Assembly: GCA_900088475.1 (NCBI GenBank)
Contig: FLMG01002721.1
Location: 1 to 64,000, forward strand
DNA: 64,000 nucleotides
From: Hyphochytrium catenoides
Lineage: Eukaryota; Protista; Hyphochytriomycota
Direction: 5' to 3'
In this document: piece by piece, positions 45,984 through 59,376 of the stretch
Numbering within the stretch: the first letter of the stretch is position 1
How the letters are laid out: every line of letters starts with the position of its first letter
Notes under the pieces: model-generated
The model's database searches: none
What the model saw: only the letters and a program-made list of their open reading frames with translations
Told to the model about the DNA's origin: nothing
Made by a program: the position numbers and the translations under genes

Positions 45984-48900
45984 TCATCCGGTCAGAAAGC
46001 CTCTGACAGTCACTCTAAATGGTGTCATCTTCTGCGTGAACTTGTCTCTGTTGTTGACCTCAAGATTCCGTCGCACGTCGACAAAGAGTTTGGAAAATGC
46101 TTCTTCCAGCCGAGCCTGGTTCTGAGGGCTTTGCGTCATGATGAGCTGCTGCTTACACTGCTGGAACGCCTGGGTTTACCGGCACAGACCACATGAGATG
46201 GAGAGGTCAGGAGAGAAGTGGAGCTGAGCTGATAAAAGAGAATAAAGGCAAGAACATGCTTGAGACATCGCCGTGGAGTTCTGACAAGACGTACGAGGTG
46301 CATCAGACAAAGAGAGCTAACTAATATGGCCTCGAGGGCAAGCGAACCTAAATCTGCAGAATAGGCTTGGTAAACAACGACGTGCTCAGCTTACCTCCTC
46401 ACTGGCAAGTGTAATGCTGAGAATTGGTCTGGAGAGAGACCACTGGATATTCGTCTCGCCAAAGAGGATAATATTGAAAAGGGTCGAGAGAAGAGCTGTC
46501 AGAAGCCCTGGGTTGGCGCTGAGATGCAGCTTCATCTTCCTCATTATGGGTGTGTCTTTGGAAGAGTTTGAGAAGTGGTAGGTAGCAAGATAGTCCACGG
46601 CGGAGGCGCATTGTGTACAAAGGGTTGAGTCTGGAGACACGAGCAGCAAGAGAGATAAGCTGAGTGGGACCGCACAGGGCAAGTGCTCTAGACTGCATGC
46701 GAGGCTCCCATGGAGTTGCAACAATGCTTTCCTCGACTATAGCCCTTGCTTCTCACTGGCCTCTGACTTACCTAAGGAGTTGAGTCCCTCGTGCAAGGAG
46801 TTGATCAGCTGCATGAAGATCGGTGTGTCCAGCATGATCACGAAAGGAACGTGGTTCCGGAACAAGATTTCCAAAAATGAGAAGTATGCTTTTGTGAGCT
46901 TAGGATATGTCTGCAGTCAATGGGATGGCCGTGGATAACGGTACCGGGAGTAGGAGCAATGTTAGATTAACTGACAGAGCGGTAGTAAGCCGGGGTTACT
47001 AGACTAGCGTTTACAAGGTTGATGTCTCCAGAAAGAAAGCGTTGAGCAATATCAACTCTAGCGGAGGAGCAAGGAACAGTGCTACAAGAGACGCTCAGCC
47101 GAGCAAGGAGATGCATTACACCCAGTATGGTCTATGTTAAGGAGACCACGCTCACAACAGAGCAAGAACCAATAGGCAGAGAATCCCTTGAGAGTATCGG
47201 CAGATAAGTATAGGGAGAGTCGGGTGATGGCAAATTAGCAGAATCGTCGGCGACGAGGAACAAGTGAGTGGAAGGTAAGATAGCTCAGAGAAGCCACGGA
47301 GGTCTGGACACTATGAGGTGAGAAGGGTAGTACCATGAGCTCCTGTAAGGGCACTGAGAGCGCAAGCTGCAGCGCTATTTCCAGTGCATTATCCAGGGCC
47401 TTGTCATTGTACAACGCAAACACGCCAAAGTTAACGTAGCCGCCGGCTGCGAAGGTCATAGAAGTGGTAAAGGATATTGAGATTAGTTTACATCTGTGAA
47501 GGGAGCGGTAAACGGTGGTACATGAAGAGGAGAATATGATACATCTGCATCACTTTCTGGGTTACATTCAGAGTGTAGCCACAAAGGACCGGCACCAAAG
47601 GGCATGGGAGATCGCGCCAAGGATAATGTAAGCGAACATTGAAGGAAGAGAGGAGACACAAAGCAGCTCCAGAATAGGTGAACCAGATTGAGAAAGAGGC
47701 AGAGGAGAACGTATCACAAGGTCGGGATGTGTCACAGGTCATACCGAGTGCTCTGGATAGCACCGCTAGCGTAAGCCTAATCCCCTTGTACTTGTTTCGA
47801 TAGAGATCAGACCGCTGGAAGAGCCGGTCAGTCAGTACGCCGCCATTGCCATAGAGGCAAGGACTGAGCATCACAATACGACAACCTAGGAAAATGCAGG
47901 AGACATACGGCGTGGCTGCAGCTAACGGGACCCAGAAGCCGAATGCCTAAGCAGACCCGTCTAGAAGAGGCAAGCAAGCCACCCGCGAGCATGGCGATAG
48001 TAGGGAGCAAGGAGCAGTAGCGACCTCGTCTTACCGGCTGATAGTTAACAACCTGCCTTCCATAAGCCACTATAGTCTCTGAGATTTCTCTAAAGAGCAG
48101 GATGCCGTTGGGCGAGGACTGATCAAAGACCACTCTATGCGACTTATTATAGGCGAACTCGTTCATGAACTGAAGCAACGCGGTTATCACGCTAGGGTCA
48201 TCGTAGCACTCCTTGCCAGCCCGCACGAAGACAGGAAAGTATGCTGGGTAAAGGTACTCGAAGAGGCAGCCATAGGTTTTTCTGTTATGCGTGCTGGAGG
48301 TGATGCCTCTGAGGTCTCTGCAGACGCCAGTAATGGCTTGCTTCACGCTATCTGTGCGGAAGTTTGGAGTCTGTTGCAGTTGTGCTACAAGCAAGAGGGC
48401 CATTAGACGCACAAAGAGTAAAAACGTTCAAACTAACTGAGAGGCGGCAAAACAAAGAGCAGTAGGAGTCCGTGAAAAAGCCATCAGATTATGCGACCAA
48501 GTAGGAAGAGAGAAGGTCGACTGAGGGGTAAACATCTGAAGGAGCGTCAAGGAGAGACAACACTGACAAGGATGGCATTTCCCTTACCTAGAGTATTAAG
48601 GATGGGCTGCACAAAGATGTCAAATCTTTCTAGCGAGTCATCAATGGATGAGAGCAGTATCTTCGTGAGAGTCGAGTAGAAAAGTGTCCGATGGCGAGTA
48701 TTGGCAGGATAGCTAAGGAAAGGGAAGTCCTCGGCAGTATGGTGCTGCATCAAATACTGCACAGTGTCCAGGGAAAGAAGGAGCTTCCCGCTGCCATAGC
48801 CTGAAGCGATTTCCCAGAAAAGCTCTAGAGTCTTCCCTATAATCTCTTCCTCTTCCGCCCAATACTTTAGATTGTTCCCTATCTTGGTGACAATCATATT

Positions 48901-51900
48901 CACAACGACGATATGGTCCCCCAGACCCATTCTCTCGAACATACGCTGATAAGCTCTTTGTTTTCCGGAAAGGGCGGTGATATCCGTGCTCTGAGACGGC
49001 ATTCCATGCTGCTCCCCGATGTAAGACCGTCGGAACGCGTGGAAGTAAAAAAGGAGAGCGAGTTCAAGCTTCGTGTCACACCTGCTCTGTCCTCTCGTGC
49101 TTGTGGCTCTATATTCTACGATCCTCATTAGTTCAAAGGTTCTCCTGGATAGGTCAGCGTCAACCGACTCATCACCATCCCTAACTTGGCTAGAGGCCCA
49201 AGCGTGGCCTCCAATGACCGCGCCCACGAAATAAGTCAGCCAGGTCATCTTTCCTTCTAAGGATTGCAACTTGGCGGCTGTGGGTTGATCTGACGGAGCT
49301 GGATTGACTTGCAATATGTCCTTGTATTGGCGAAGTAGCGGATCAAAGAGAGAAACGAGGTACTGTCCGATGGTCTCATATTGGTGTCGAACTATGGTGG
49401 GCAGTCTTTCCAGCTGCTCTTTGAGATTGCCCTCATCCTCAAGCGGATCCTCGAAGGCCTCATTCTGCAACACCATGTCCACAGAGTCGATACGAGACTG
49501 CACATAAGCCTGCACCACCTAATATCGAAGAAGAAGGACACCTGAGGTTAGTCGAACTCGAAGTTCCTACTATCTCAAACAAACAAGAGCGCAGCCATTG
49601 AGGGCCTTAAGGCACTAGACTACTCGCCACCTCGTAGTGGGCGGTTGACAGATATCTCAGGGATATTCACAAAGGGTAATGCTGGTCAATGAGTGACAAG
49701 ATAGAGAAAGGTGGCGGGCAAAGTACCCTAGGAATGTATCCGTCCAAGTTCGCTGCAGATCTCCCTTGCGCATCCGGCTTGACGTATGGCACGGCCGCCA
49801 CCAGCCTCGCCCAAAGGCTCAGTAAATAGTGCACACTGTTTGCAGAGAACTAGATACACGTTGAGAAGGCGATAACTGTTCAGTATTGGGGCGGCAGTGA
49901 CAGAAAAGCAAATAAAGCAAGGAAAGAGCAAAGCCCATCTACCTGAAGAACCAGATCAGGTGTCAGACAGAGCACTGGAGTAGAAGAACTTTAAAAAAAT
50001 CACCAGTGCATACTTGAAGAGTAGCAAGGAAGTTGGCGATCCTTATGTTTACCTGCCATTGCTGAAAGCTATTCACAGTGAAACTGGCTGCTAAATCCAT
50101 CCACTCCCGGTACCCGTCCGTCTTGACCAGCTCAGAGAGTTGATAGTTCGTCTTTAGCCGACCCAGCAATCTGCAGAACTCATGATAGTTGGCGGGATCA
50201 GACAGCCCGACCTGCTTCGATAGGATCTCTCGGGTTCCAGAGAGAAGCTGTGCCAGGAAGCGAGATAGCTCCTTATCCGTGGAAAACAGTGAGCGCCGAC
50301 AGGATGAAAGGAGAAGGAGAACTTCTAAAGCCTTCGCGCTATTAGGCGGCTCTGATTGCTGGTAAGCCTGAAATAACATATCCATGGTTGCAGGCTCTTG
50401 GATAAGAGGTCGCCATGTGCTAGGCACCTACAAAGCACATCAGACTCTTAGTAAATCATGCGTGAAGCCACTCGGACTGACAAGGCCCATAATCAAATTT
50501 GAGAGAGAGGAAATCCTTTCTGTGGCCGACAAGACTTCTCAGAAGGAGCAAAATGTGATAATGGCGCAATGGCGAAGAAATTGAGTAAGTAGCTCAAAGG
50601 CGTGGGAAGCGCTAGGAGGTGGGTCTTCCCTCTAATACTTTCCCAATTTAAGACAGAACGACACAAAAGACGCGCTGAAGGTGGAGACCACTGAGAGAAG
50701 AGGATTGAGATAGAGGAAAATGGAGAGAGTCAAGTCAGCTGCACCTGGATAGCTCCGATGTCCTCTGCGGACTCGTCCGGGTTGGTGCCAATGAAGTCAA
50801 AGGACAGACATTTGACGGCAAGGTCCAGCGATAGCTCGGTCATTTTATTCTCCTGGCTCTTATCCGCTGTCACCACTGTTCTTAGTTGTAGCTGTCGCAG
50901 AGTTGTGAGGGAGACCTGAAATATCTGTTAAAAGAAAGAGGCACACGGTTCAGTAGTCTGTTGACGGGCGGAATCGAGTCCTCTGTAAACTTAGGTGAGA
51001 GGCCCTCCCTAGATTGGCGTCTTAGACACCACACGACAAAGAGAGTATGAAGAAATTGAGAAAGAGCAGAGGAACCGGGAAAGAGCCAAGGATGCCGAAA
51101 GTAGGCGGGGCAACCGTGGACCTGACGCGTTGTTTCTCGGCCCAGTATGCCTTAGAAGGTGGGAGCGTAAGATAACTGAGGGCTGGCCCGTCATACCTGA
51201 TAAAGAGACTCATCTCTGAAAGATACAGCGGTCTTTCTGTGCTGCGCAAGAGTCCGTCCGCTGGTAGGTTGATTCATCTCATTCACTAACTCAATGAGGA
51301 TTTGCAGTCCTATGAGGCAGTGCTCCACCGTCGCCTGGGCAGTGAGAACAAGCTTAATAACCAGCCATGTGCAGCTTTTTCGAGACAGCACCAGACCAAG
51401 GTGATATGGGATATTTCGACGCTTTAGACAGGGACCAAGGAACAGAGAAGTGGGTAACAACGCACACCAAGCAGAGCTTTCTGAGAAGTACATATGACAA
51501 GCCAGGCTTTCACATGCTGGGATTGAGAGAGCATAGACAAATAGAGAGCCAGAGACTGCGAGCTGAATAGAGGATACCAGGCCGGCAAAAATGGTGAGGG
51601 CAAAACGGGGGAAAGTCGGGGAAAGAGTTTACCTGTAGGAATTTGCTGACTTCCTGAGTAATTTTCCTGTGCTGGTCATCGTCAAACCAGCCGAGCTTGC
51701 TGATACGACAGACGAGTTGGATTAGGGAAACGTTGACAAACTTTTCCATCAAGGGACCTTTCTGGGCGAGATAGTTCAGAATATAGTTCCCTGTGCGAGC
51801 AGTCAGAGGAAACACGTGAGAGCTGAGCCCATACGGAACCGCAGACCGGGCGCTATAGACATAGAATAACACAAGAAGATTGAAAGGTGAACCACATAAG

Positions 51901-52314: not shown

Positions 52315-52614
52315 TCTGTCGGACGTTAGGCTACCAATGGGACAGAGAAGCGTGGCAGGGAAAACCAGGACCCTACGATGCCCTTCTAAATATAAGTGAG
52401 CCCAATGTGCATGAAAGGTTCTGTGAAGGAGCCGCGACAAGAACTTCAGCGGGCTGGAGAGGTGGGAAGGCCAAGCCCGGGCACTCGCAGCCGACAAGGT
52501 CGTGATTCAATCCCCTGCCGCGATGATGCTTATCTCAGTCTATACTTGAGTCCCAGTACGTTCAAAGGATTACGCTGCAATCGAAGAAGTGGGCTGACAG
52601 GTGGTGAGGGTACC

Positions 52615-53344
52615 GAGAGAGAGCGAGACAGAGAGAGCGAGACAGAGAAAGCGAGAGAGCGAGAGAGCGAGAGAGAGAGAGAGAGAGACGTTGCTCTGCG
52701 GATGAAGATGCTCGTGGGAGGTGCGAGTGCTGGTGGCGGATCTAGTGACATGATCTTTCCCCTGCGCATCAACCGCCTGGCCTCCCTCACCTCATATCCT
52801 ACAGACATTACGAATAAGGACTCTTGTATTCGGGACCTGTATGGCTTCTCATGATTCTCAGTTCATTTGTAATCTATTCGGTTTTATTGTGAGATAATGA
52901 TGATTCTACTGAATCATATCGGGGATTTAGGCTGAAGGTAATATCTGGATGAGTACAGTAACACAAACAAATGAATCTTCTTTTGTGTGAGAGACAGAGC
53001 AGAGAGAGAAAGGCAGAGACAAAGAGAGGGTTGTCTAGGGACGCTGGCAGACAGAGTACGGAGAGAGAGAGAAGAGTGAGAAAGAGAGAGAGAGAGAGAG
53101 ATTGTGTGTGAGAGAGAGAGAGAGAGAGATCAAATGTGGCTTTCGATTTTCAGGCCTTCTGGAGTTCTGATCAATCTTCTTGACTCTCCCACGTCCCCGG
53201 CGGTCGCCCTTTCGCGCTCACTTCCCATCATGCTCGCTCGCCCTCTCTTCCGCTATTCTCCCGCCTCCTTTCCGTAGCCTGTCTAGCCTGGTTCTTCTGT
53301 TTATCTCTCTCTCCCCCCCNNNNNNNNNNNNNNNNNNNNNNNNN
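52615..53344. repeat. GA-rich microsatellite blocks and an N-gap (53320-53344) in the XPO7/TSEN2 divergent intergenic region
   Basis: (GA/GAGC) tracts at about 52615-52688 and 53060-53128; 25 N at 53320-53344. Confidence 0.85.
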
Positions 53345-53478
53345 CCCAATCTACCTCTCTCTCTCTCCCCCACATCTCATCGAGAGTGTGCTCCATGATC
53401 TAGCGCAAAAGAAACTACTTCTTTTCTACCTCTGCTTGCCTGCCCTGTGAGGCCACATCATGAACGCTGCCACCAGCT

Positions 53479-55292
53479 ATGGCCTGGCGAGTCCGAGGCT
53501 GCCTTCTCCCATCCGCCGTGGCAGTGGATGATCCAGAAGCCTGTGCGCTGCTCTATCAATGTGGCTGCTATGGCTTACGCTCCCCGCATTTTGCCTCCGG
53601 CGGGGGCCTCATCCTCTCCTTCGAAGAGATTGCCTTTCTAATGGCGGAGGGCGATCTGGTGCTTGACATTGCTGATGAAGCGGGAGAGATCATAACTCAG
53701 GAGACGCTCTGGTCTACTATCATCAGGTGCTGCTTAGATGCTGTTGAACGGCCTTTCTTCTCCCTTTCCTCCCCGCGTTCTCCTAACGCCCGGCCATAGC
53801 CTCTTCTATGCTCAGCAGCCTTACTGTCTTCGCCTCCCTGCTTTCATCTCTCTGACCTCTTGAAGGCACAGGGCATCCTTCCTTCCAAGCTTTATCGTCT
53901 ACGCGCACTTTCGCCGCTTGGGTTGGATACTTCGGCGAGGCCACAACTATGGAACAGACTTCCTCCTTTACCCTGGCCCTCCCTCAGAGTTCCATTCTCT
54001 CTACTGCGCACTCATAACAGAGCCCATCCGGAGCGTCAGATGGAAGCAGCTGCAGGTGTGACAAACCTGAACTTGGTCCTACTTCTGTCTTGGCACTTGT
54101 CCTGGTCGCTTGTTGTTCGCTAAGAAGGGATCTTATTCCGCTTTCTCTCTATACGTGAATGACTTATCTTTGCTTAGAGCTATAAACCGGCGTGGGTTGT
54201 CGTCACGAAGTCCACCTCACGGACAATCTCTTCTACTCTCTCGTTCCCCTCTATTCCATCTGCTTTCAGGGCCTTCTTCGCATTATGCCCGATGTCAAGA
54301 AGTCGTTGCTCCTTTGCTGCGTGACAGTTCCTGCAGAGCTAGCAATCCCTTCCTACAACTCGGAGAATCTGCGTGCCCTGCTCAGTAGAAGCAGCGTTTC
54401 TGTCGTCTCCATGAAGTTTGAGCCCTCTCCTGTGCGCCTGTCTAGTCCAATATTCTCCTCTCCTATAAGCAAGCCTTCCTACCAAACTTCCAGCTCTATT
54501 TCTGGACTGAACCCCTACTCTACGTCAGAGAAGGGGATCCAACAACCCTCATCTGCCGGCTTAGCTTCTGTTGAGGATCTTAAAGAGCTAGCGGCTGAGA
54601 AGCGCTTCAGGATGGTGCTTCTTGTTGGCCTTCCTGGTAGCGGCAAGAGTTTCCTGTCTTCTAGAATCTTTGGCGGGGAAGGTGAGGTGGACTAGCCTGC
54701 TGCTTGTTCTTCGCTAATGCCCTTCTTTCGGCTCCCCTTCTTACATCAGATTTTGCACTCTATGTAGGCTGGGTCATTGTCTCTCAGGACGAATTGGGTT
54801 CCAGACAGCGTTGCGTCGACCTTGTGAAGGTAAGGACTGCAGCAGAGAAGAAGTAAGCTCTCGTACTCACGTGCTCTTCACACCACAGAAATCTATGAGC
54901 CAAGGCTCTCCTTTTATCATTGATCGCTGCAATGTGACGAAAGAGAGCAGAGCAGAATGGATTGACTTGCTGAAGAGACATAATGAGGGCGCCCAGAGCT
55001 GCTGCATCACACTTCTCTCTCCCTTACAAATATGTCGTGACCGTGTCTATACCAGGGTAGGTCATAAAGCTCTGAAAGGGAGAGAGCGTGCTATGCGGTA
55101 AGTAATTTATGGCCGTCTCCTTTTGACCGCTTTATAGGGTTTCACGTCTTTGCTCTAGCCCGTATGTCACTATATCATTCACCCCCCGTCCTTTGTCCCT
55201 CGTCGCCCAGGGTCGTAGATATCTTCGCTCGAAGCTTTGAGATGCCGGTGGAAGAAGAAGGTTTCAACACATACTACATTATTCAGCAATAA
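53479..55292 (+). CDS. TSEN2: tRNA-splicing endonuclease catalytic subunit (Sen2-like) fused to a C-terminal P-loop polynucleotide-kinase-like (AAA_33/T4-PNK fold) domain, about 400 aa; exons 53479-53726, 53866-54055, 54270-54681, 54768-54829, 54889-55097, 55211-55292
   Basis: Endonuclease: LILSFEEIAFL; FIVYAHFRRLGWILRRGHNYGTDFLLYPGPPSEFHSLY (catalytic Y and H, 8 apart); WKQLQ|GLLRIMPDVKKSLLLC (catalytic K). Kinase: MVLLVGLPGSGKS, WVIVSQDELGSRQRC, FIIDRCNVTKESRAEW, ICRDRVYTRVGH, FEMPVEEEGF. Five GT-AG introns, all phase-compatible; total 1203 nt. Confidence 0.88.
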
Positions 55293-55355
55293 ATAGGAGG
55301 AAATTGGACTTCTTCTGGAGAGCCAACCTCTGCTACTGATGAAGTGGACGTATTG

Positions 55356-58300
55356 CTAGACTGCGCGGACGGTCGGGGGTGCAGGCTTTTTACCGTCGTT
55401 GAAATATCTAACGGCAGACCTCACCTCTTCAGCGGTCCTTCTGCGCATATCTGATCCATCTTTCCTACCTCCTGGCCGGCTGAATCTGCCCTTAGTCTGA
55501 CCCTTGCTATCGTCCACGTAGCCGCTGTACTCAAGGCTCGCGGCGTCTATGCCTTGGTGTCGAAGTCTGCCGCGAATAGCCTCCTGATCGCCTCGCCGGA
55601 TTCCTATATCATTCGTGACTTCCTCCACAGTCTGCAAGACAACATGACAGGGAGAGGAGTTAATCTTCCGTCCACTCTCGTCCATTTCCCTCTATCTCTG
55701 GCCCTCTAGTTCCCAAAGCCTCTGCCTATATATCCGTTTTCCTCACTGATCTCAAGCCGGGAGCCTTACCTGAGAGCCGTCCTTATTAGTCACCAGCACT
55801 CTTCTGTTTGATGTGTTCTCACACCAGCCCTTCCCTCCAGAGATGTGCCAGGCGTTCCTTATCATAAGCTCAAAGTAATCATCGCCGTCAATAGCTGCAC
55901 TAATGTTCCTATAATATTCTTCGAACTCCTCCCGAGTGACTATTTCGTCTCTTTCTCCTGCCGAGCCTTTGCCTCCCTGAAAGTTGTCCAAGAACTCTTT
56001 CAAGGCTTGTCCCTTGGTCATGGTACCGTCTAGGACTTGAGGATGCTGGGAGACGTCATATGCCCCTTCTAGATCGTGGAGGTCAACCTGTCCATCTCCC
56101 GTTCGATCAAGGATATCAAAAGCTTGATGGACAAGCCGGAGTCTTCTCTCGTTCATTGGTCCTCTGAGCCCTATCATCAGCTCATCGAAGTCAATGCTGT
56201 TACTCTTGTCCCTGTCCAGGTAGGTGAAGAGATCATCCAACTCTCGGGCATTGAGCAGTAGACCCTGCCCGGCAAGACCACTCTTCAGCTCTTCTCGGGT
56301 CAGCTTCCTGTCCCCATTATCGTCAAACCTACCGAGTGCTCTCTGTACGGCATGTATCCCATTTCCCCCACAAGACTGAAGAATCTTCAGTCTCAGCCTC
56401 TCCACTGTAGAAAGAGGCTCTGCAACTTCTTTCTTCCCCTTTCCAAAGCGCTCTTGAAAGTGCTCATGCAGCCGGACGAGGTCGATGGTCCCTGAACCAT
56501 GAGGGTCTAAACTCTCAGCCAGCTGTTGCGCCACTCTCCTCGAGAGAACCTTCACACTTGAGTCCTTCCTGTTTAGTCTTTGGGTCAGGTCCAGAAGCTG
56601 GTGGGCAAAGGCATTGACATTCATCTTTTCAGCACCATCGGCAAGGACCCGATTAGCCCCTAGCCTGTTGGTCATCTCCTCCAATGTGAGCGCCTTGGAG
56701 AGAGTAGTGGTCCCTCCATTTGCTGTGATAACTGTCTCTTTGGGCGTGTACAGAAGTTCTTTCAGCTGAAGGATAGCGTCTTTCTCTTCTGGCTCCTTAG
56801 ACAGACGGATAGTTCCTTGTTGTCCTCCAGAGGATGGTCTTGATACTGGCCTGCGCGATGTAAGCGCAGGCTGTGGTGGAAGAGCTTCATCACCACTTCC
56901 GTTGAGATATCCATCCCACTCATTGCCCTGATCTTCCTCTAACCTGCTCTTTGCCTTGCTGGTAGTACCTGGAGGGCTGGAGCGCCGTCGATCTATGATC
57001 TCTCGGCTAGTTCTTGCCCTACCGCTATGTGTAGAGAGGGATCGTCTCTCATTATATCTGAGTTGTTCTTCGGCCGCGAGCTCCCTCCGTCTCACTGTGT
57101 CACGTCCCCCAGGAGATCTTAGTTCCTGGGTTTCGACTTCCTGATGTCTTTCTGAGTGGCGTTGGGGCGCCTTGTCGGCCCTCCTCCCTTGGCGATTATG
57201 CTCATCCATTCCGTACCTCGTATCTCTCGCAGTGCCACGCTCATCTCTTCTCCCTCCTCCTCCTACTTCTCCGAGAAGGCCTGGCCTCTTCTCTGGCTTC
57301 CTAGGCTTTTCCGTGGCATCAATAGAGCCGTAATATCCCAGCTTCTCCCCCTGCCGTACTCGGTTGTCTTGCTGCAGCTTGTTCCTGATGGCGGCCTCAT
57401 CTCGGCCTCTAATCCTGATATCATTTCTTACCTCTTCCACTCTCTCATTTCCATCTTCCCCTTGTACTAGCACCCGCCTGTTACTGCTGTTTGCTGCTGC
57501 GCCCTTCCCTCCCGCTATGTGCCAAGCATTCCGGATCATTAGCTCGAAATATCCATCATCGTCTATCGACGCGCTAACATTTCGATAGTACGCATAGAAC
57601 TCCTCTCGAGTAATAAGGTTGTCATAGTTGTTGCTAATATCTGGACGCTCCCACTGCTGCATAAACTCCTTTACGACCTGCTCCTTCGTCTTCCTCCGCG
57701 CCACCACGTCAGGGTGCTTGCTAGCATCATATAGCTCTAGCATCTCTTCAAGAGAGACCTCATCGTTCCCATTCACATCCAGCTGATCGAAGGCAAGGTC
57801 TATCAGTCTCTTGCGGACTTCATTCAGCTCCCCTCTGAGACCTGAGAGGAGCTCATCAAATGATACTGAACCTGAGCCGTCATTGTCTAAGAAATGGACG
57901 AGGATGTCCAGCTCCTTGGGGGAGAGGTCAATGCCAAAGTCCCTTAGTCCATAGTTTAGCTCCTCAGCGGATAGCTTCTTATCCCCGTTATTGTCTAGGA
58001 TACGGAAGAGACGAGCGATGGTGTGGAGCCCATTGGCACCGAGGCGCGCGGTCAGAGTATCTCGGATGCGGGCCAGTACCTTCTGCTCCTTCTCCTGCTC
58101 TTCTTCTCCGCCGAATATCCCGACCAAACTAGTCTCATTTCTTCTAGCAGCCGATGGGCGTCCAAACACCACTTCGTCATCTTGTCGTGAGGAGATACCA
58201 TGGTGTCTGACGGACCCAGAAGAGAGCGGCCGGACGGATCCTTGAGCCGATCTTGGCCGTAGGCTCGGTCCGAGAGGATGTTTCCCTGAGCTCGGCCGTA

Positions 58301-59376
58301 CCTGGGCAGGGCGTACACCTGCAGATGGTGGCCTCCTCATAGGAGTCGAAGAAGTAGATAACTTCCGTGGCTCTTCGTCTCTCTTTGCCCTCCTAGCCTT
58401 GGTATCCAGTGCTGCTCTCAGCTGTTGTGACCATGATGCTTCAATGGTACCATTTGGAGTGAGCAGCAGCTCCAGAGCCGGTGCCAGACTAAGCCGGACA
58501 GACTTCCTCTTCTTGGCATGCTCACCTGCGACTGCTATGATGGCCTGGACAGTTTGCTGTAGGTGCTCACGGTTAAGAGAAGATCTCTTGGCCAGCTTGG
58601 ACCAGTTCATCTTCGCAATCGGCGTCGGTGCTATAGGACGTGGGAGAGGCATACGGCTAATCAGATATCACGCGGAGAAGGCATCGAGAGCAGGGTTGCG
58701 CACAGAGTGGTGGGAAGCTGGCGAGACGGAGGCGTGACAAGAAAAGCTGATGAACTCGCTGTAAGGGAATTGGACGAGCATGTGGTTGAAGAGGAAGTAC
58801 CGATATGAGCAGGAAGGAATCGCTAAAGCACACTAACTGCAAGACCAAGGAGGCCAGCTTAGGCGTTCGAGAACAAAGGAATCGTAAGCTGGCTAGAAGG
58901 AGGTAGCGCGCGTAATAGAAGTTCAATGTTGCCTCTTGCTTAGAAGGGGGTGAGTAGAACTAACCCAGGGGAGGAGGAGACTGCTGCTTGACATTGTACT
59001 GCTGTTGGAATCCATTAGAAAGAATGAACACCAAGGTCCCTGCTTTGGAAATAGCGAAAGTCCCTAGGCCTTCAATGTTCAGTGGCTGGAATTCAAGAAG
59101 ATGGTGGAGGACGTAATCTGACAGCTCTTTCCAGGCCTTTAAGGTGTCGTCCTACGTCGTACGGCAAATCGTCAGAAACACAGGTGAAAAGTACTGGCAG
59201 AAAGGACAGCTGTGCTGGGGTTGAAAGAACCGGAACAAACGCGATGCAACGCCTCGCCATGTGCCAACACCTGTAGTAATGAAAGGACTCACCAATGAAA
59301 AGAGTTTCACACGCTCTTGAGCCTGGCAGACAAGCTCGGCAAGCGTCAGATCTGGAGCGCTCTGCGTTGGGGCCAT
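55356..59376 (-). CDS. CCDC81-type tandem HU-like domains plus two calcyphosin-like EF-hand modules, about 1135 aa; exons 59376-59293, 59151-58965, 58630-55770, 55631-55356
   Basis: N-terminus KAWKELSDYVLHHLLEFQPLNIEGLGTFAI...VFILSNGFQQQYNVKQ...PIAKMNWSKLAKRSSLNREHLQQTVQAII (HU-CCDC81-like). EF loops DNNGDKKLSAEE, DNDGSGSVSFDE, DVNGNDEVSLEE, DDNGDRKLTREE, DRDKSNSIDFDE, DRTGDGQVDLHD. The calcyphosin signature EEF..YY.N.SA.ID.D.YFELMIRNAWHI occurs twice. Confidence 0.85.

What the first reader, a model, noticed from the sequence alone, without database searches (positions are those of the whole stretch)
53479..55292. tRNA-splicing endonuclease (Sen2-like) fused to a 5'-OH polynucleotide-kinase-type domain: a possible single-chain 'cut-and-heal' tRNA intron processing enzyme
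Seen: the end of the endonuclease domain (GLLRIMPDVKKSLLLC, carrying the catalytic Lys), a Ser/Pro-rich linker and the kinase Walker A (MVLLVGLPGSGKS) lie in ONE stop-free exon (54270-54681), so the fusion does not depend on a splice prediction. The Tyr-His-Lys triad is intact. The kinase keeps the P-loop, the SQD aspartate, DRCN, the following Arg and an RxxxR lid, ending in P...EGF. Established: TSEN/Sen endonucleases leave 2',3'-cyclic phosphate and 5'-OH ends, and Sen2 cuts the 5' splice site, making the intron's 5'-OH. In metazoans the kinase CLP1 binds TSEN non-covalently; in yeast and plants the kinase is part of the Trl1/RNL ligase. The motifs here are T4-PNK/PNKP/AAA_33-like (similar to the kinase domain of plant aprataxin-like bHLH140), not CLP1-like. 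Inference: this lineage may have tethered a different RNA 5'-kinase directly to Sen2, to mark excised introns for XRN decay, block RtcB circularisation, or heal 3' exons for a separate ligase. I know of no described Sen2-PNK fusion but cannot search for one.
Basis: partly seen in the sequence, partly recalled or inferred. Interest (0 to 1): 0.9.

Follow-up and report, generated by a model that had tools for sequence, protein, structure and literature searches.

The report
tRNA-cutting enzyme fused to RNA kinase
In this soil protist, one gene joins the enzyme that cuts introns out of tRNAs to an enzyme that adds a phosphate to the newly cut RNA end; I found this pairing in only one other sequence and in no paper, and it links the kinase family directly to tRNA splicing.

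Summary
A six-exon gene at 53479-55292 (+) has five GT..AG introns and encodes about 400 aa. It has a tRNA-splicing endonuclease N-domain and catalytic domain with the Tyr-His-Lys triad intact. A Ser/Pro-rich linker of about 90 aa follows, then a P-loop polynucleotide 5'-OH kinase. The end of the nuclease, the linker and the P-loop lie in one stop-free exon (54270-54681). RNA contigs confirm only the last two introns.

A 455-aa protein (P0125) is a complete ORF on an intron-free environmental contig. It shows the same collinear fusion (29% identity, E 3e-33).

The closest solved structures to the kinase are the Mucorales stand-alone tRNA-splicing RNA kinases (RazKIN 9D8A; profile E 7e-29), then PNKP. 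No CLP1 chain is listed at E<=1. The P-loop, catalytic Asp and both lid Arg are kept. The GTP-specifying G-loop is absent.

The oomycete catalytic subunits I examined, among them the one most identical to the window's, lack the kinase. I found no paper describing this architecture.

The genome is a stramenopile pseudofungus, probably Hyphochytrium. Its endonuclease is probably an (alpha-beta)2 enzyme, so "Sen2" is only a label.

Verdict: a real and rare new domain architecture. The cut-then-phosphorylate function is inferred, not shown.

The parts
53479..53726 (+). Exon 1: start codon and N-terminal domain of the tRNA-splicing endonuclease (aa 1-83)
   Evidence: Pfam tRNA_int_endo_N 2.9e-8 over aa 6-78, covering profile positions 2-67 of 67. 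An in-frame stop lies upstream of the ATG. The donor is CAG|GTGCTG.
53866..54055 (+). Exon 2: core of the endonuclease catalytic domain, with Tyr118 (53969-53971) and His126 (53993-53995)
   Evidence: Pfam tRNA_int_endo 1.5e-12. It aligns to human TSEN2 residues 338-384, placing Y118 and H126 on TSEN2 residues 369 and 377. A phmmer search found 463 relatives at E<1e-3.
54270..54326 (+). Start of exon 3: last strands of the catalytic domain, with catalytic Lys157 (54300-54302)
   Evidence: P0125 aligns to TSEN2 through residue 416, and the model aligns to P0125. The motif RIMPDVKKSLLLC matches the oomycete RIAADVKKTVLLC.
54327..54596 (+). Middle of exon 3: Ser/Pro-rich linker of about 90 aa (aa 166-255)
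   Evidence: The frame is open (0 stops, against 7 and 8 in the other two frames), and 3.5% of shuffles of the linker alone are stop-free. P0125 has a linker of similar length that is not conserved in sequence.
54597..54681 (+). End of exon 3: kinase strand beta-1 and P-loop GLPGSGKS (54627-54650)
   Evidence: The best PDB hits for this piece are RazKIN 9d8a and 9drz. Pfam matches AAA_33 positions 1-20.
54768..54829 (+). Exon 4: kinase segment WVIVSQDELGSRQRC, with the putative catalytic Asp291 (54788-54790)
   Evidence: It aligns with the RazKIN/9drz segment INQDD(L/M)GSR. MciKIN Asp36 is essential (PMC11571804, outline). The 3' junction is confirmed by an RNA contig.
54889..55097 (+). Exon 5: kinase core IIDRCN (Asp316, 54922-54924) and lid arginines R356 (55042-55044) and R360 (55054-55056)
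   Evidence: RazKIN (3.4e-6) and 9drz are the only PDB hits at E<10. R356 and R360 align with RazKIN Arg99 and Arg103. Both flanking introns are confirmed by RNA contigs of X1.
55211..55292 (+). Exon 6: last kinase helix and strand (..SFEMPVEEEGFNTYYIIQQ) and the TAA stop
   Evidence: It aligns with the ..EGF.. ends of P0125 and P0166. An RNA contig runs unspliced across the stop to 55301. The protein ends where the RazKIN G-loop would begin.

Best explanation
This is one real gene for a roughly 45-kDa bifunctional protein. Its front half is the catalytic (alpha, Sen2-like) subunit of the tRNA-splicing endonuclease. A flexible linker of about 90 residues ties it to a polynucleotide 5'-OH kinase of the PNKP / Mucorales-KIN clade.

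Shown: both domains are present in one reading frame, their known catalytic residues are intact, and the architecture recurs in a second organism.

[quoted passage not shown] The tethered kinase then phosphorylates the 5'-OH ends released beside it. These are the 3' exon, readied for a 5'-phosphate-dependent Trl1/RNL-type ligase, and most likely also the intron, readied for 5'-to-3' exonuclease decay. On this reading it is a covalent 'cut and phosphorylate' module, a convergent counterpart of the non-covalent TSEN-CLP1 pairing of animals. Because the protein stops before the G-loop that makes the fungal kinases GTP-specific, I predict relaxed NTP donor use.
For: Gene and frame: there are six exons and five canonical introns, and the junction exon is stop-free at a level 0.28% of shuffles reach. 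RNA contigs confirm introns 4 and 5.

Domains: Pfam hits on the exon translations. The Tyr and His of the triad align directly to human TSEN2, and the Lys aligns by way of P0125.

Kinase family: RazKIN and 9drz are the top PDB hits for each window piece. The family profile scores 7e-29 against RazKIN and 1e-17 against PNKP, and no CLP1 chain is among the 60 best of 91 matches. The P-loop, Asp, and lid Arg99/Arg103 equivalents are kept.

Characterised relatives: the Mucorales kinases replace the kinase step of tRNA splicing in yeast and phosphorylate 5'-OH RNA in vitro (PMC11571804).

Independent second instance: P0125 is a complete 455-aa ORF with an upstream in-frame stop on a 1443-nt intron-free contig. 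It carries PF01974 and PF13671 and is collinear with the window protein at E 3e-33. With the two fusion proteins forced together, the best tree found has a log-likelihood 61.9 higher than the free quick search, p-AU 0.91.

Context: (alpha-beta)2 TSEN is expected outside Amorphea (PMC10485636). An unchecked scan note reports a Trl1-architecture ligase elsewhere in this genome.
Against: No RNA read covers exons 1-3 or the E3|E4 junction in this organism. Met261 sits just before kinase strand beta-1, so a kinase-only isoform from an internal start cannot be excluded.

No activity data exist for either domain. If the genome's Trl1-like ligase has its own working kinase domain (an unchecked lead), exon healing by the fused kinase would be redundant.

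The oomycete catalytic subunits I examined lack the kinase, so the coupling is dispensable in close relatives. Only two full-length instances were found, and the endonuclease tree is otherwise unresolved.
Confidence: 0.65

Rival explanations
1. The fusion protein is the same, but the kinase serves disposal rather than repair. It phosphorylates the excised intron's 5'-OH (and perhaps stray tRNA halves) so that a 5'-monophosphate-dependent exonuclease destroys them. The exons are healed by the kinase domain of a separate Trl1-type ligase, or joined directly by RtcB.
For: A first-stage note reports a Trl1-architecture (ligase-kinase-CPD) gene elsewhere in this genome (unchecked), which would already supply an exon-healing kinase. 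The TSEN review discusses the same role for CLP1 in animals (PMC10485636). In yeast, intron decay needs the Trl1 kinase and Xrn1 (my own knowledge of Wu and Hopper 2014, not read here).
Against: The closest characterised kinases act in exon healing when tested in yeast. A tethered kinase in an (alpha-beta)2 enzyme sits next to both 5'-OH ends and has no evident way to ignore the 3' exon. If the ligase were RtcB, phosphorylating the 3' exon would block ligation.
Confidence: 0.25
2. Two proteins, not one. The locus mainly yields a short endonuclease subunit and a separate kinase that starts at Met261, through an internal promoter, alternative polyadenylation or proteolysis in the linker. On this view the long ORF is a minor or transitional form.
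For: Met261 lies four residues before strand beta-1, where the stand-alone Mucorales kinases begin. No RNA evidence spans exons 2-4. The linker is low-complexity and poorly conserved.
Against: The 270-nt linker is stop-free and in frame with both domains. P0125 encodes the whole fusion in one ORF on one contig. There is no stop codon that would end a nuclease-only protein in exon 3.
Confidence: 0.08
3. The kinase does something unrelated to tRNA introns. It could be DNA end repair like PNKP, or processing of other RNAs cut by the endonuclease. It could also be a nucleotide-binding regulatory module rather than a kinase of nucleic acid ends.
For: PNKP is the second-best structural relative. MciKIN phosphorylates DNA as well as RNA in vitro. 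The AAA_33 family is fused to many end-processing domains (PNK3P, Macro-HIT) in other proteins. TSEN has an essential non-tRNA function in yeast.
Against: Fusion to the enzyme that makes 5'-OH RNA ends is itself the strongest functional hint. The acceptor-activating Asp and the lid arginines are conserved in both fusion proteins.
Confidence: 0.07
4. Artefact: an assembly chimera or a wrong gene model has joined two neighbouring genes.
For: The assembly is a draft, with an N gap 130 nt upstream (53321-53345) and heterozygous haplotigs.
Against: The junction lies inside one exon. An independent contig of DNA run X2 spans 54215-55372 without a break. P0125 shows the same join in another organism.
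Confidence: 0.02

Closest known systems
Mucorales stand-alone tRNA-splicing RNA 5'-OH kinases (MciKIN, RazKIN PDB 9D8A, LcoKIN; Ghosh et al., RNA 2024, PMC11571804)
   Different: The fungal enzymes are free-standing proteins of 163-208 aa, whereas this one is the C-terminal domain of the endonuclease subunit. The window protein ends about ten residues after ..EGF and lacks the G-loop (Ser146) that gives the fungal enzymes GTP specificity. The host is a stramenopile, not a fungus.
Eukaryotic tRNA-splicing endonuclease catalytic subunit (TSEN2/Sen2; archaeal EndA alpha subunit)
   Same: It has the N-terminal and catalytic domains (Pfam PF02778 and PF01974) and a Tyr-His-Lys triad with the same spacing as human TSEN2 residues 369/377/416. 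The highest pairwise identity over the catalytic domain is 49%, to the Lagenidium subunit P0160. The oomycete subunits share its RI..DVKK..LLC motif.
   Different: No described Sen2, Sen34 or EndA carries a kinase. The nuclease part is compact (about 165 aa, the size of an archaeal subunit) and lacks the long insertions of animal TSEN2. Orthology to Sen2 rather than Sen34 is weak for the window itself (31 against 26 bits) and is probably moot if the enzyme is (alpha-beta)2.
Metazoan TSEN-CLP1 complex
   Same: An RNA 5'-OH kinase is physically coupled to the tRNA-splicing endonuclease.
   Different: CLP1 binds non-covalently through TSEN54. No chain named CLP1 is among the 60 best of the 91 PDB matches to the kinase profile at E<=1; that CLP1 belongs to a different P-loop kinase family is my own knowledge. 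Here the link is a peptide bond to the catalytic subunit.
Trl1/RNL trifunctional tRNA ligase (LIG-KIN-CPD) and mammalian PNKP
   Same: They use the same logic of fusing a polynucleotide kinase to another end-processing activity. PNKP's kinase is the next-best structural relative (1e-17). There is a weak sub-threshold Pfam tRNA_lig_kinase hit for the relative P0166.
   Different: The fusion partner here is the nuclease that makes the ends, not the ligase or phosphatase that finishes them. No ligase, CPD or phosphatase domain is present.

Membership tests
tRNA-splicing endonuclease catalytic subunit (EndA/Sen2/Sen34) | Catalytic C-terminal domain (Pfam PF01974) | tested here: met
   Exon 2 scores 1.5e-12 (47.9 bits, cutoff 27) over profile positions 1-58. 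The rest of the domain is at the start of exon 3 and aligns with P0125 and TSEN2.
tRNA-splicing endonuclease catalytic subunit (EndA/Sen2/Sen34) | N-terminal domain (Pfam PF02778) | tested here: met
   Exon 1 scores 2.9e-8 (33.5 bits, cutoff 21) and covers profile positions 2-67 of 67.
tRNA-splicing endonuclease catalytic subunit (EndA/Sen2/Sen34) | Tyr-His-Lys catalytic triad | tested here: met
   Y118 and H126 align with TSEN2 positions 369 and 377. K157 aligns with position 416 by way of P0125. The review states that the triad is Tyr, His, Lys. The human residue numbers as the catalytic ones are my own knowledge.
tRNA-splicing endonuclease catalytic subunit (EndA/Sen2/Sen34) | Orthology to Sen2 rather than Sen34 | tested here: inconclusive
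   Window exon 2 scores 31.1 bits against TSEN2 and 26.5 bits against TSEN34. P0125 scores 65.4 against 21.2 bits. The tree is unresolved. Non-Amorphea probably have one catalytic subunit.
tRNA-splicing endonuclease catalytic subunit (EndA/Sen2/Sen34) | Assembly with a structural subunit, and cleavage of pre-tRNA or bulge-helix-bulge RNA | not testable with these tools
   Only this 64-kb window can be read. It contains no tRNA genes.
Polynucleotide 5'-OH kinase, PNKP / Mucorales KIN clade (Pfam AAA_33) | P-loop GxxxxGK[ST] after strand beta-1 | tested here: met
   GLPGSGKS at aa 266-273.
Polynucleotide 5'-OH kinase, PNKP / Mucorales KIN clade (Pfam AAA_33) | Aspartate that activates the acceptor 5'-OH (MciKIN Asp36) | tested here: met
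   D291 in VSQDELGSR aligns with the NQDD(L/M)GSR segment of RazKIN and 9drz. The essentiality of Asp36 is taken from PMC11571804.
Polynucleotide 5'-OH kinase, PNKP / Mucorales KIN clade (Pfam AAA_33) | Lid arginines contacting the base and phosphates (RazKIN Arg99, Arg103) | tested here: met
   R356 and R360 align with chain positions 101 and 105 of 9d8a, which are Arg99 and Arg103.
Polynucleotide 5'-OH kinase, PNKP / Mucorales KIN clade (Pfam AAA_33) | G-loop with Ser146 giving GTP specificity (Mucorales KIN and fungal Trl1) | tested here: not met
   The protein ends at ..EGFNTYYIIQQ, and an RNA contig reads through the stop. The RazKIN G-loop lies after this point.
Polynucleotide 5'-OH kinase, PNKP / Mucorales KIN clade (Pfam AAA_33) | Overall sequence membership | tested here: met
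   The profile of window pieces plus P0125 and P0166 scores 103.9 bits (7e-29) against RazKIN, 99.3 bits against 9drz and 67.6 bits against PNKP. Window exon 5 alone hits RazKIN at 3.4e-6, with no other PDB family at E<10. Pfam AAA_33 on single exons falls just under the cutoff because the domain is split (25.7 against 27 bits).
Polynucleotide 5'-OH kinase, PNKP / Mucorales KIN clade (Pfam AAA_33) | Phosphoryl transfer to 5'-OH RNA | not testable with these tools
   This needs a biochemical assay.
CLP1 RNA kinase | Sequence similarity to the CLP1 kinase domain | tested here: not met
   No chain named CLP1 is among the 60 best of the 91 PDB matches to the kinase profile at E<=1, nor among the 38 matches of P0166's kinase at E<=1.
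Trl1/RNL kinase domain (Pfam PF08303) | Match to tRNA_lig_kinase above the curated cutoff | tested here: not met
   There is no hit for the window pieces. The relative P0166 scores 19.3 bits, below the cutoff of 22.7. PDB tRNA ligase 9r3w scores only E 0.026 against P0166.

The most novel reading that the evidence does not exclude
A lineage of stramenopiles has hard-wired an RNA 5'-kinase to the catalytic subunit of a symmetric (alpha-beta)2 tRNA-splicing endonuclease, so that every cut is immediately followed by 5' phosphorylation of both the 3' exon and the intron. This would be an independent, covalent reinvention of the animal TSEN-CLP1 partnership using a different kinase family. It would also be natural 'Rosetta stone' evidence that the recently found Mucorales-type kinases are true tRNA-splicing enzymes, and that kinase coupling to TSEN is functionally selected rather than incidental.
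Probability: 0.5. Interest if true: 0.75.

Novelty: new variant of a known kind. Interest (0 to 1): 0.62.

Why it matters
Why animal TSEN carries the kinase CLP1 is unresolved and is tied to neurodegenerative disease (PMC10485636). Which enzymes heal tRNA halves where Trl1 is split was only partly answered in 2024 (PMC11571804).

A natural protein that covalently joins the cutting subunit to a kinase of that 2024 clade argues, by gene fusion, that 5' phosphorylation is functionally coupled to intron excision. It also offers a compact single-chain system in which substrate choice (3' exon or intron), channelling and NTP use can be measured directly.

It further flags non-Amorphean (alpha-beta)2 endonucleases, which have hardly been studied, as a source of new biology. 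The finding is limited to two sequences and rests on sequence inference, so its weight depends on experiments.

Tried and rejected
1. Searching for the window's own protein or close orthologues. A word-based search with exon 3 found nothing. phmmer with exon 2 against 1.84 billion representatives found no close copy of the window's own protein among the 150 listed; the best identity was 61% over 41 aa. The organism's proteome is apparently not in these collections.

2. RNA support. Only one RNA run held the gene, and only two read-sized contigs lay on it.

3. More fusions in JGI metagenomes. An exon 5 query found nothing. A scan with conserved nuclease motifs found P0125's own contig and three ordinary nuclease loci with no kinase within 3 kb.

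4. A profile search of 5.8 billion proteins with P0125 plus window pieces found no further PF01974+PF13671 protein. It did find P0166, a kinase of the same clade whose 5' end is cut by the contig edge, so its upstream domain is unknown.

5. The ESM Atlas has no cluster of 50 or more members with this architecture among the nearest neighbours.

6. Gene neighbourhood in oomycetes. The gene downstream of Pythium oligandrum Sen2 is a RING finger gene, not a kinase. In Lagenidium giganteum the only other gene called within 6 kb is a second endonuclease copy. I therefore rejected the idea that annotators had split a fusion.

7. The tree of 163 catalytic domains is unresolved. Only the constrained test was informative.

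8. Structure prediction was not run. MAFFT misplaced the kinase fragments once nuclease homologues were added, so the kinase half of P0125 would have been folded essentially from a single sequence.

9. Papers. Three full-text searches and four papers read gave no description of an endonuclease-kinase fusion.
Full report
**What is there.** Reading 53000-55800 in three frames gives a six-exon gene on the + strand.
- E1 53479-53726
- E2 53866-54055
- E3 54270-54681
- E4 54768-54829
- E5 54889-55097
- E6 55211-55292

All five introns are GT..AG and 59-214 nt long. The spliced CDS is 1203 nt and encodes 400 aa. An in-frame stop precedes the ATG.

Pfam on the exon translations gives tRNA_int_endo_N for E1 (2.9e-8, full length of the profile) and tRNA_int_endo for E2 (1.5e-12). 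It gives the first 20 positions of AAA_33 at the end of E3, and AAA_33 positions 67-121 for E5.

Exon 3 alone contains the last strands of the nuclease domain, a Ser/Pro-rich linker of about 90 residues, and the kinase P-loop. Its reading frame has no stop, while the other two frames have 7 and 8. Only 0.28% of shuffles of the exon are stop-free. The fusion therefore does not rest on any predicted splice.

**Transcript and assembly evidence.** Only one RNA run held part of the gene. Two 151-nt contigs from it carry the E4|E5 and E5|E6 junctions exactly as modelled. They also read unspliced through the stop codon to 55301. At the places where they differ from the window they carry the same letters as the DNA run, so they come from the same organism. 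Nothing covers exons 1-3 or the E3|E4 junction, and the reads tool was then exhausted.

An independent contig of DNA run X2 spans 54215-55372 without a break. Two haplotype contigs differ in intron 2.

**The nuclease half.** Exon 2 aligns with human TSEN2 residues 338-384. This puts Y118 and H126 on TSEN2 positions 369 and 377, with identical spacing. K157 corresponds to TSEN2 position 416 through the P0125 alignments. The TSEN review confirms that the triad is Tyr-His-Lys.

By pairwise identity the closest listed sequence is the Lagenidium subunit, at 49% over the catalytic domain. The Phytophthora and Pythium subunits share the window's catalytic motifs.

For the window itself the preference for Sen2 over Sen34 is small (31 against 26 bits). 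For P0125 it is large (65 against 21 bits). The review by Hayne et al. argues that eukaryotes outside animals, fungi and Amoebozoa generally have one catalytic and one structural subunit, giving an (alpha-beta)2 enzyme. "Sen2-like" is therefore best read as "the catalytic alpha subunit". In an (alpha-beta)2 enzyme two copies of this chain would place a kinase near both cuts.

**The kinase half.** Each window piece finds the same two best PDB entries, 9D8A (Rhizopus azygosporus kinase) and 9DRZ. For exon 5 these are the only hits at E<10.

A clean alignment of the window pieces with two relatives (A4) was used as a profile against the PDB.

| PDB match | E-value |
|---|---|
| RazKIN (9D8A) | 7e-29 |
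| 9DRZ | 2e-27 |
| Mammalian PNKP kinase | 1e-17 |
| C. thermocellum Pnkp | 3e-5 |
| T4 Pnk | 0.06 |

No chain named CLP1 and no fungal Trl1 kinase appears among the 60 best of the 91 matches at E<=1.

RazKIN belongs to the stand-alone Mucorales kinases described in 2024. These phosphorylate 5'-OH RNA and DNA, prefer GTP, and replace the kinase step of tRNA splicing in yeast (PMC11571804).

The window protein keeps these residues:
- the P-loop (G266-K272-S273);
- the Asp equivalent to the essential MciKIN Asp36 (D291);
- IIDRCN (D316);
- the two lid arginines equivalent to RazKIN Arg99 and Arg103 (R356, R360).

It ends ten residues after ..EGF, so it has no counterpart of the G-loop and Ser146 that explain GTP specificity. 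I therefore predict an active kinase with relaxed donor choice.

**Is the fusion found elsewhere?** phmmer with exon 2 against 1.84 billion representatives gave 463 hits at E<1e-3. Three of the 150 best contain a Walker-A-like string. Only one, P0125 (455 aa), has it in a kinase domain downstream of the nuclease domain.

P0125 has Pfam tRNA_int_endo and AAA_33. It is a singleton from a JGI sample. It is a complete ORF with an upstream in-frame stop on a 1443-nt intron-free contig, most likely a transcript. It aligns collinearly with the window protein over both domains and a linker of similar length (29% identity, E 3e-33). All the kinase residues above are kept, except that the Arg of IDRCN is Cys.

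With the two fusion proteins forced to be sisters, the best tree found had a log-likelihood 61.9 higher than the free quick-search tree (p-AU 0.91). This is compatible with one origin, although the tree as a whole is unresolved.

Further searches found no other full-length fusion. P0166 has a kinase 36% identical to the window's, and its reading frame is open to a truncated 5' contig edge. Its upstream part is unknown.

The oomycete catalytic subunits I examined are 189-278 aa and contain no Walker-A string. In Pythium oligandrum the next gene downstream is a RING finger gene. In Lagenidium giganteum the only other gene called nearby is a second endonuclease copy.

**Organism.** Notes from other windows call the genome a stramenopile 'pseudofungus' from soil. 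The similarity to oomycetes, the short introns, the diploid heterozygosity and the absence of its proteome from the protein collections all fit Hyphochytrium catenoides as described by Leonard et al. (PMC5795050). I did not prove the identification.

**Mechanism.** Shown: one reading frame, two domains with intact catalytic residues, and recurrence in a second organism. [quoted passage not shown]

An unchecked first-stage note reports a Trl1-architecture ligase elsewhere in the genome. A 5'-phosphate-dependent ligase fits exon healing by the fused kinase. If that ligase has its own working kinase, however, the fused one may mainly mark introns for decay. I favour a kinase that acts on both products. 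The split between these roles cannot be decided from this window.

**Novelty.** Three full-text searches and four papers on TSEN and on the Mucorales splicing enzymes mention no endonuclease-kinase fusion. Both domains belong to known families, and what is new is their combination. I rate it a new variant of a known kind. It is rare (two full-length instances) and of real interest to RNA-processing specialists. It parallels TSEN-CLP1 and supports, by gene fusion, the tRNA-splicing role of the Mucorales-type kinases.

Noticed in passing
window 54020-54244 (intron 2): DNA run X2 holds two haplotype contigs here that differ by several substitutions and by indels of 6, 3 and 1 nt. This fits a heterozygous diploid, as reported for Hyphochytrium catenoides.
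   Followed up: partly
window 55752-58652 (-): A 966-aa single-exon gene converges on the fusion gene, with the two stop codons 460 nt apart. It has two similar halves, each with EF-hand pairs, and a weak CCDC81 HU-domain hit at the N-terminus.
   Followed up: partly
window 52500-53400: A GA/CT dinucleotide-repeat-rich stretch and a 25-N assembly gap (53321-53345) lie just upstream of the gene's start, so its promoter region is incompletely assembled.
   Followed up: no
window 48550-49518 (-): A long exon encodes the TPR part of an exportin-7/exportin-4-like protein (Pfam TPR_XPO7, 3.3e-79).
   Followed up: partly
P0001 (Papaver atlanticum KAI3903264.1, 535 aa): This poppy protein has two complete tandem copies of the endonuclease N-domain plus catalytic domain in one chain, reminiscent of the fused archaeal alpha-prime-2 type. 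It is conserved in three Papaver species.
   Followed up: partly
P0123 (Cymbomonas tetramitiformis, 443 aa); P0023 (Trichinella pseudospiralis, 828 aa): These are other unusual partners of the endonuclease domain. One is a C-terminal PTM/DIR17-type Tudor domain in a green alga. The other is a metallo-beta-lactamase plus phosphopantetheinyl transferase in a nematode model, which is probably a merged gene model.
   Followed up: no
window 54249-54442: An untyped run (X7) and a plant-associated metatranscriptome run (X6) hold contigs about 93% identical to the start of exon 3. X7's contig includes 21 nt of intron 2. X6's contig stops matching at 54442, inside the linker. Close relatives of this organism therefore occur in the environment, and their linker differs.
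   Followed up: partly
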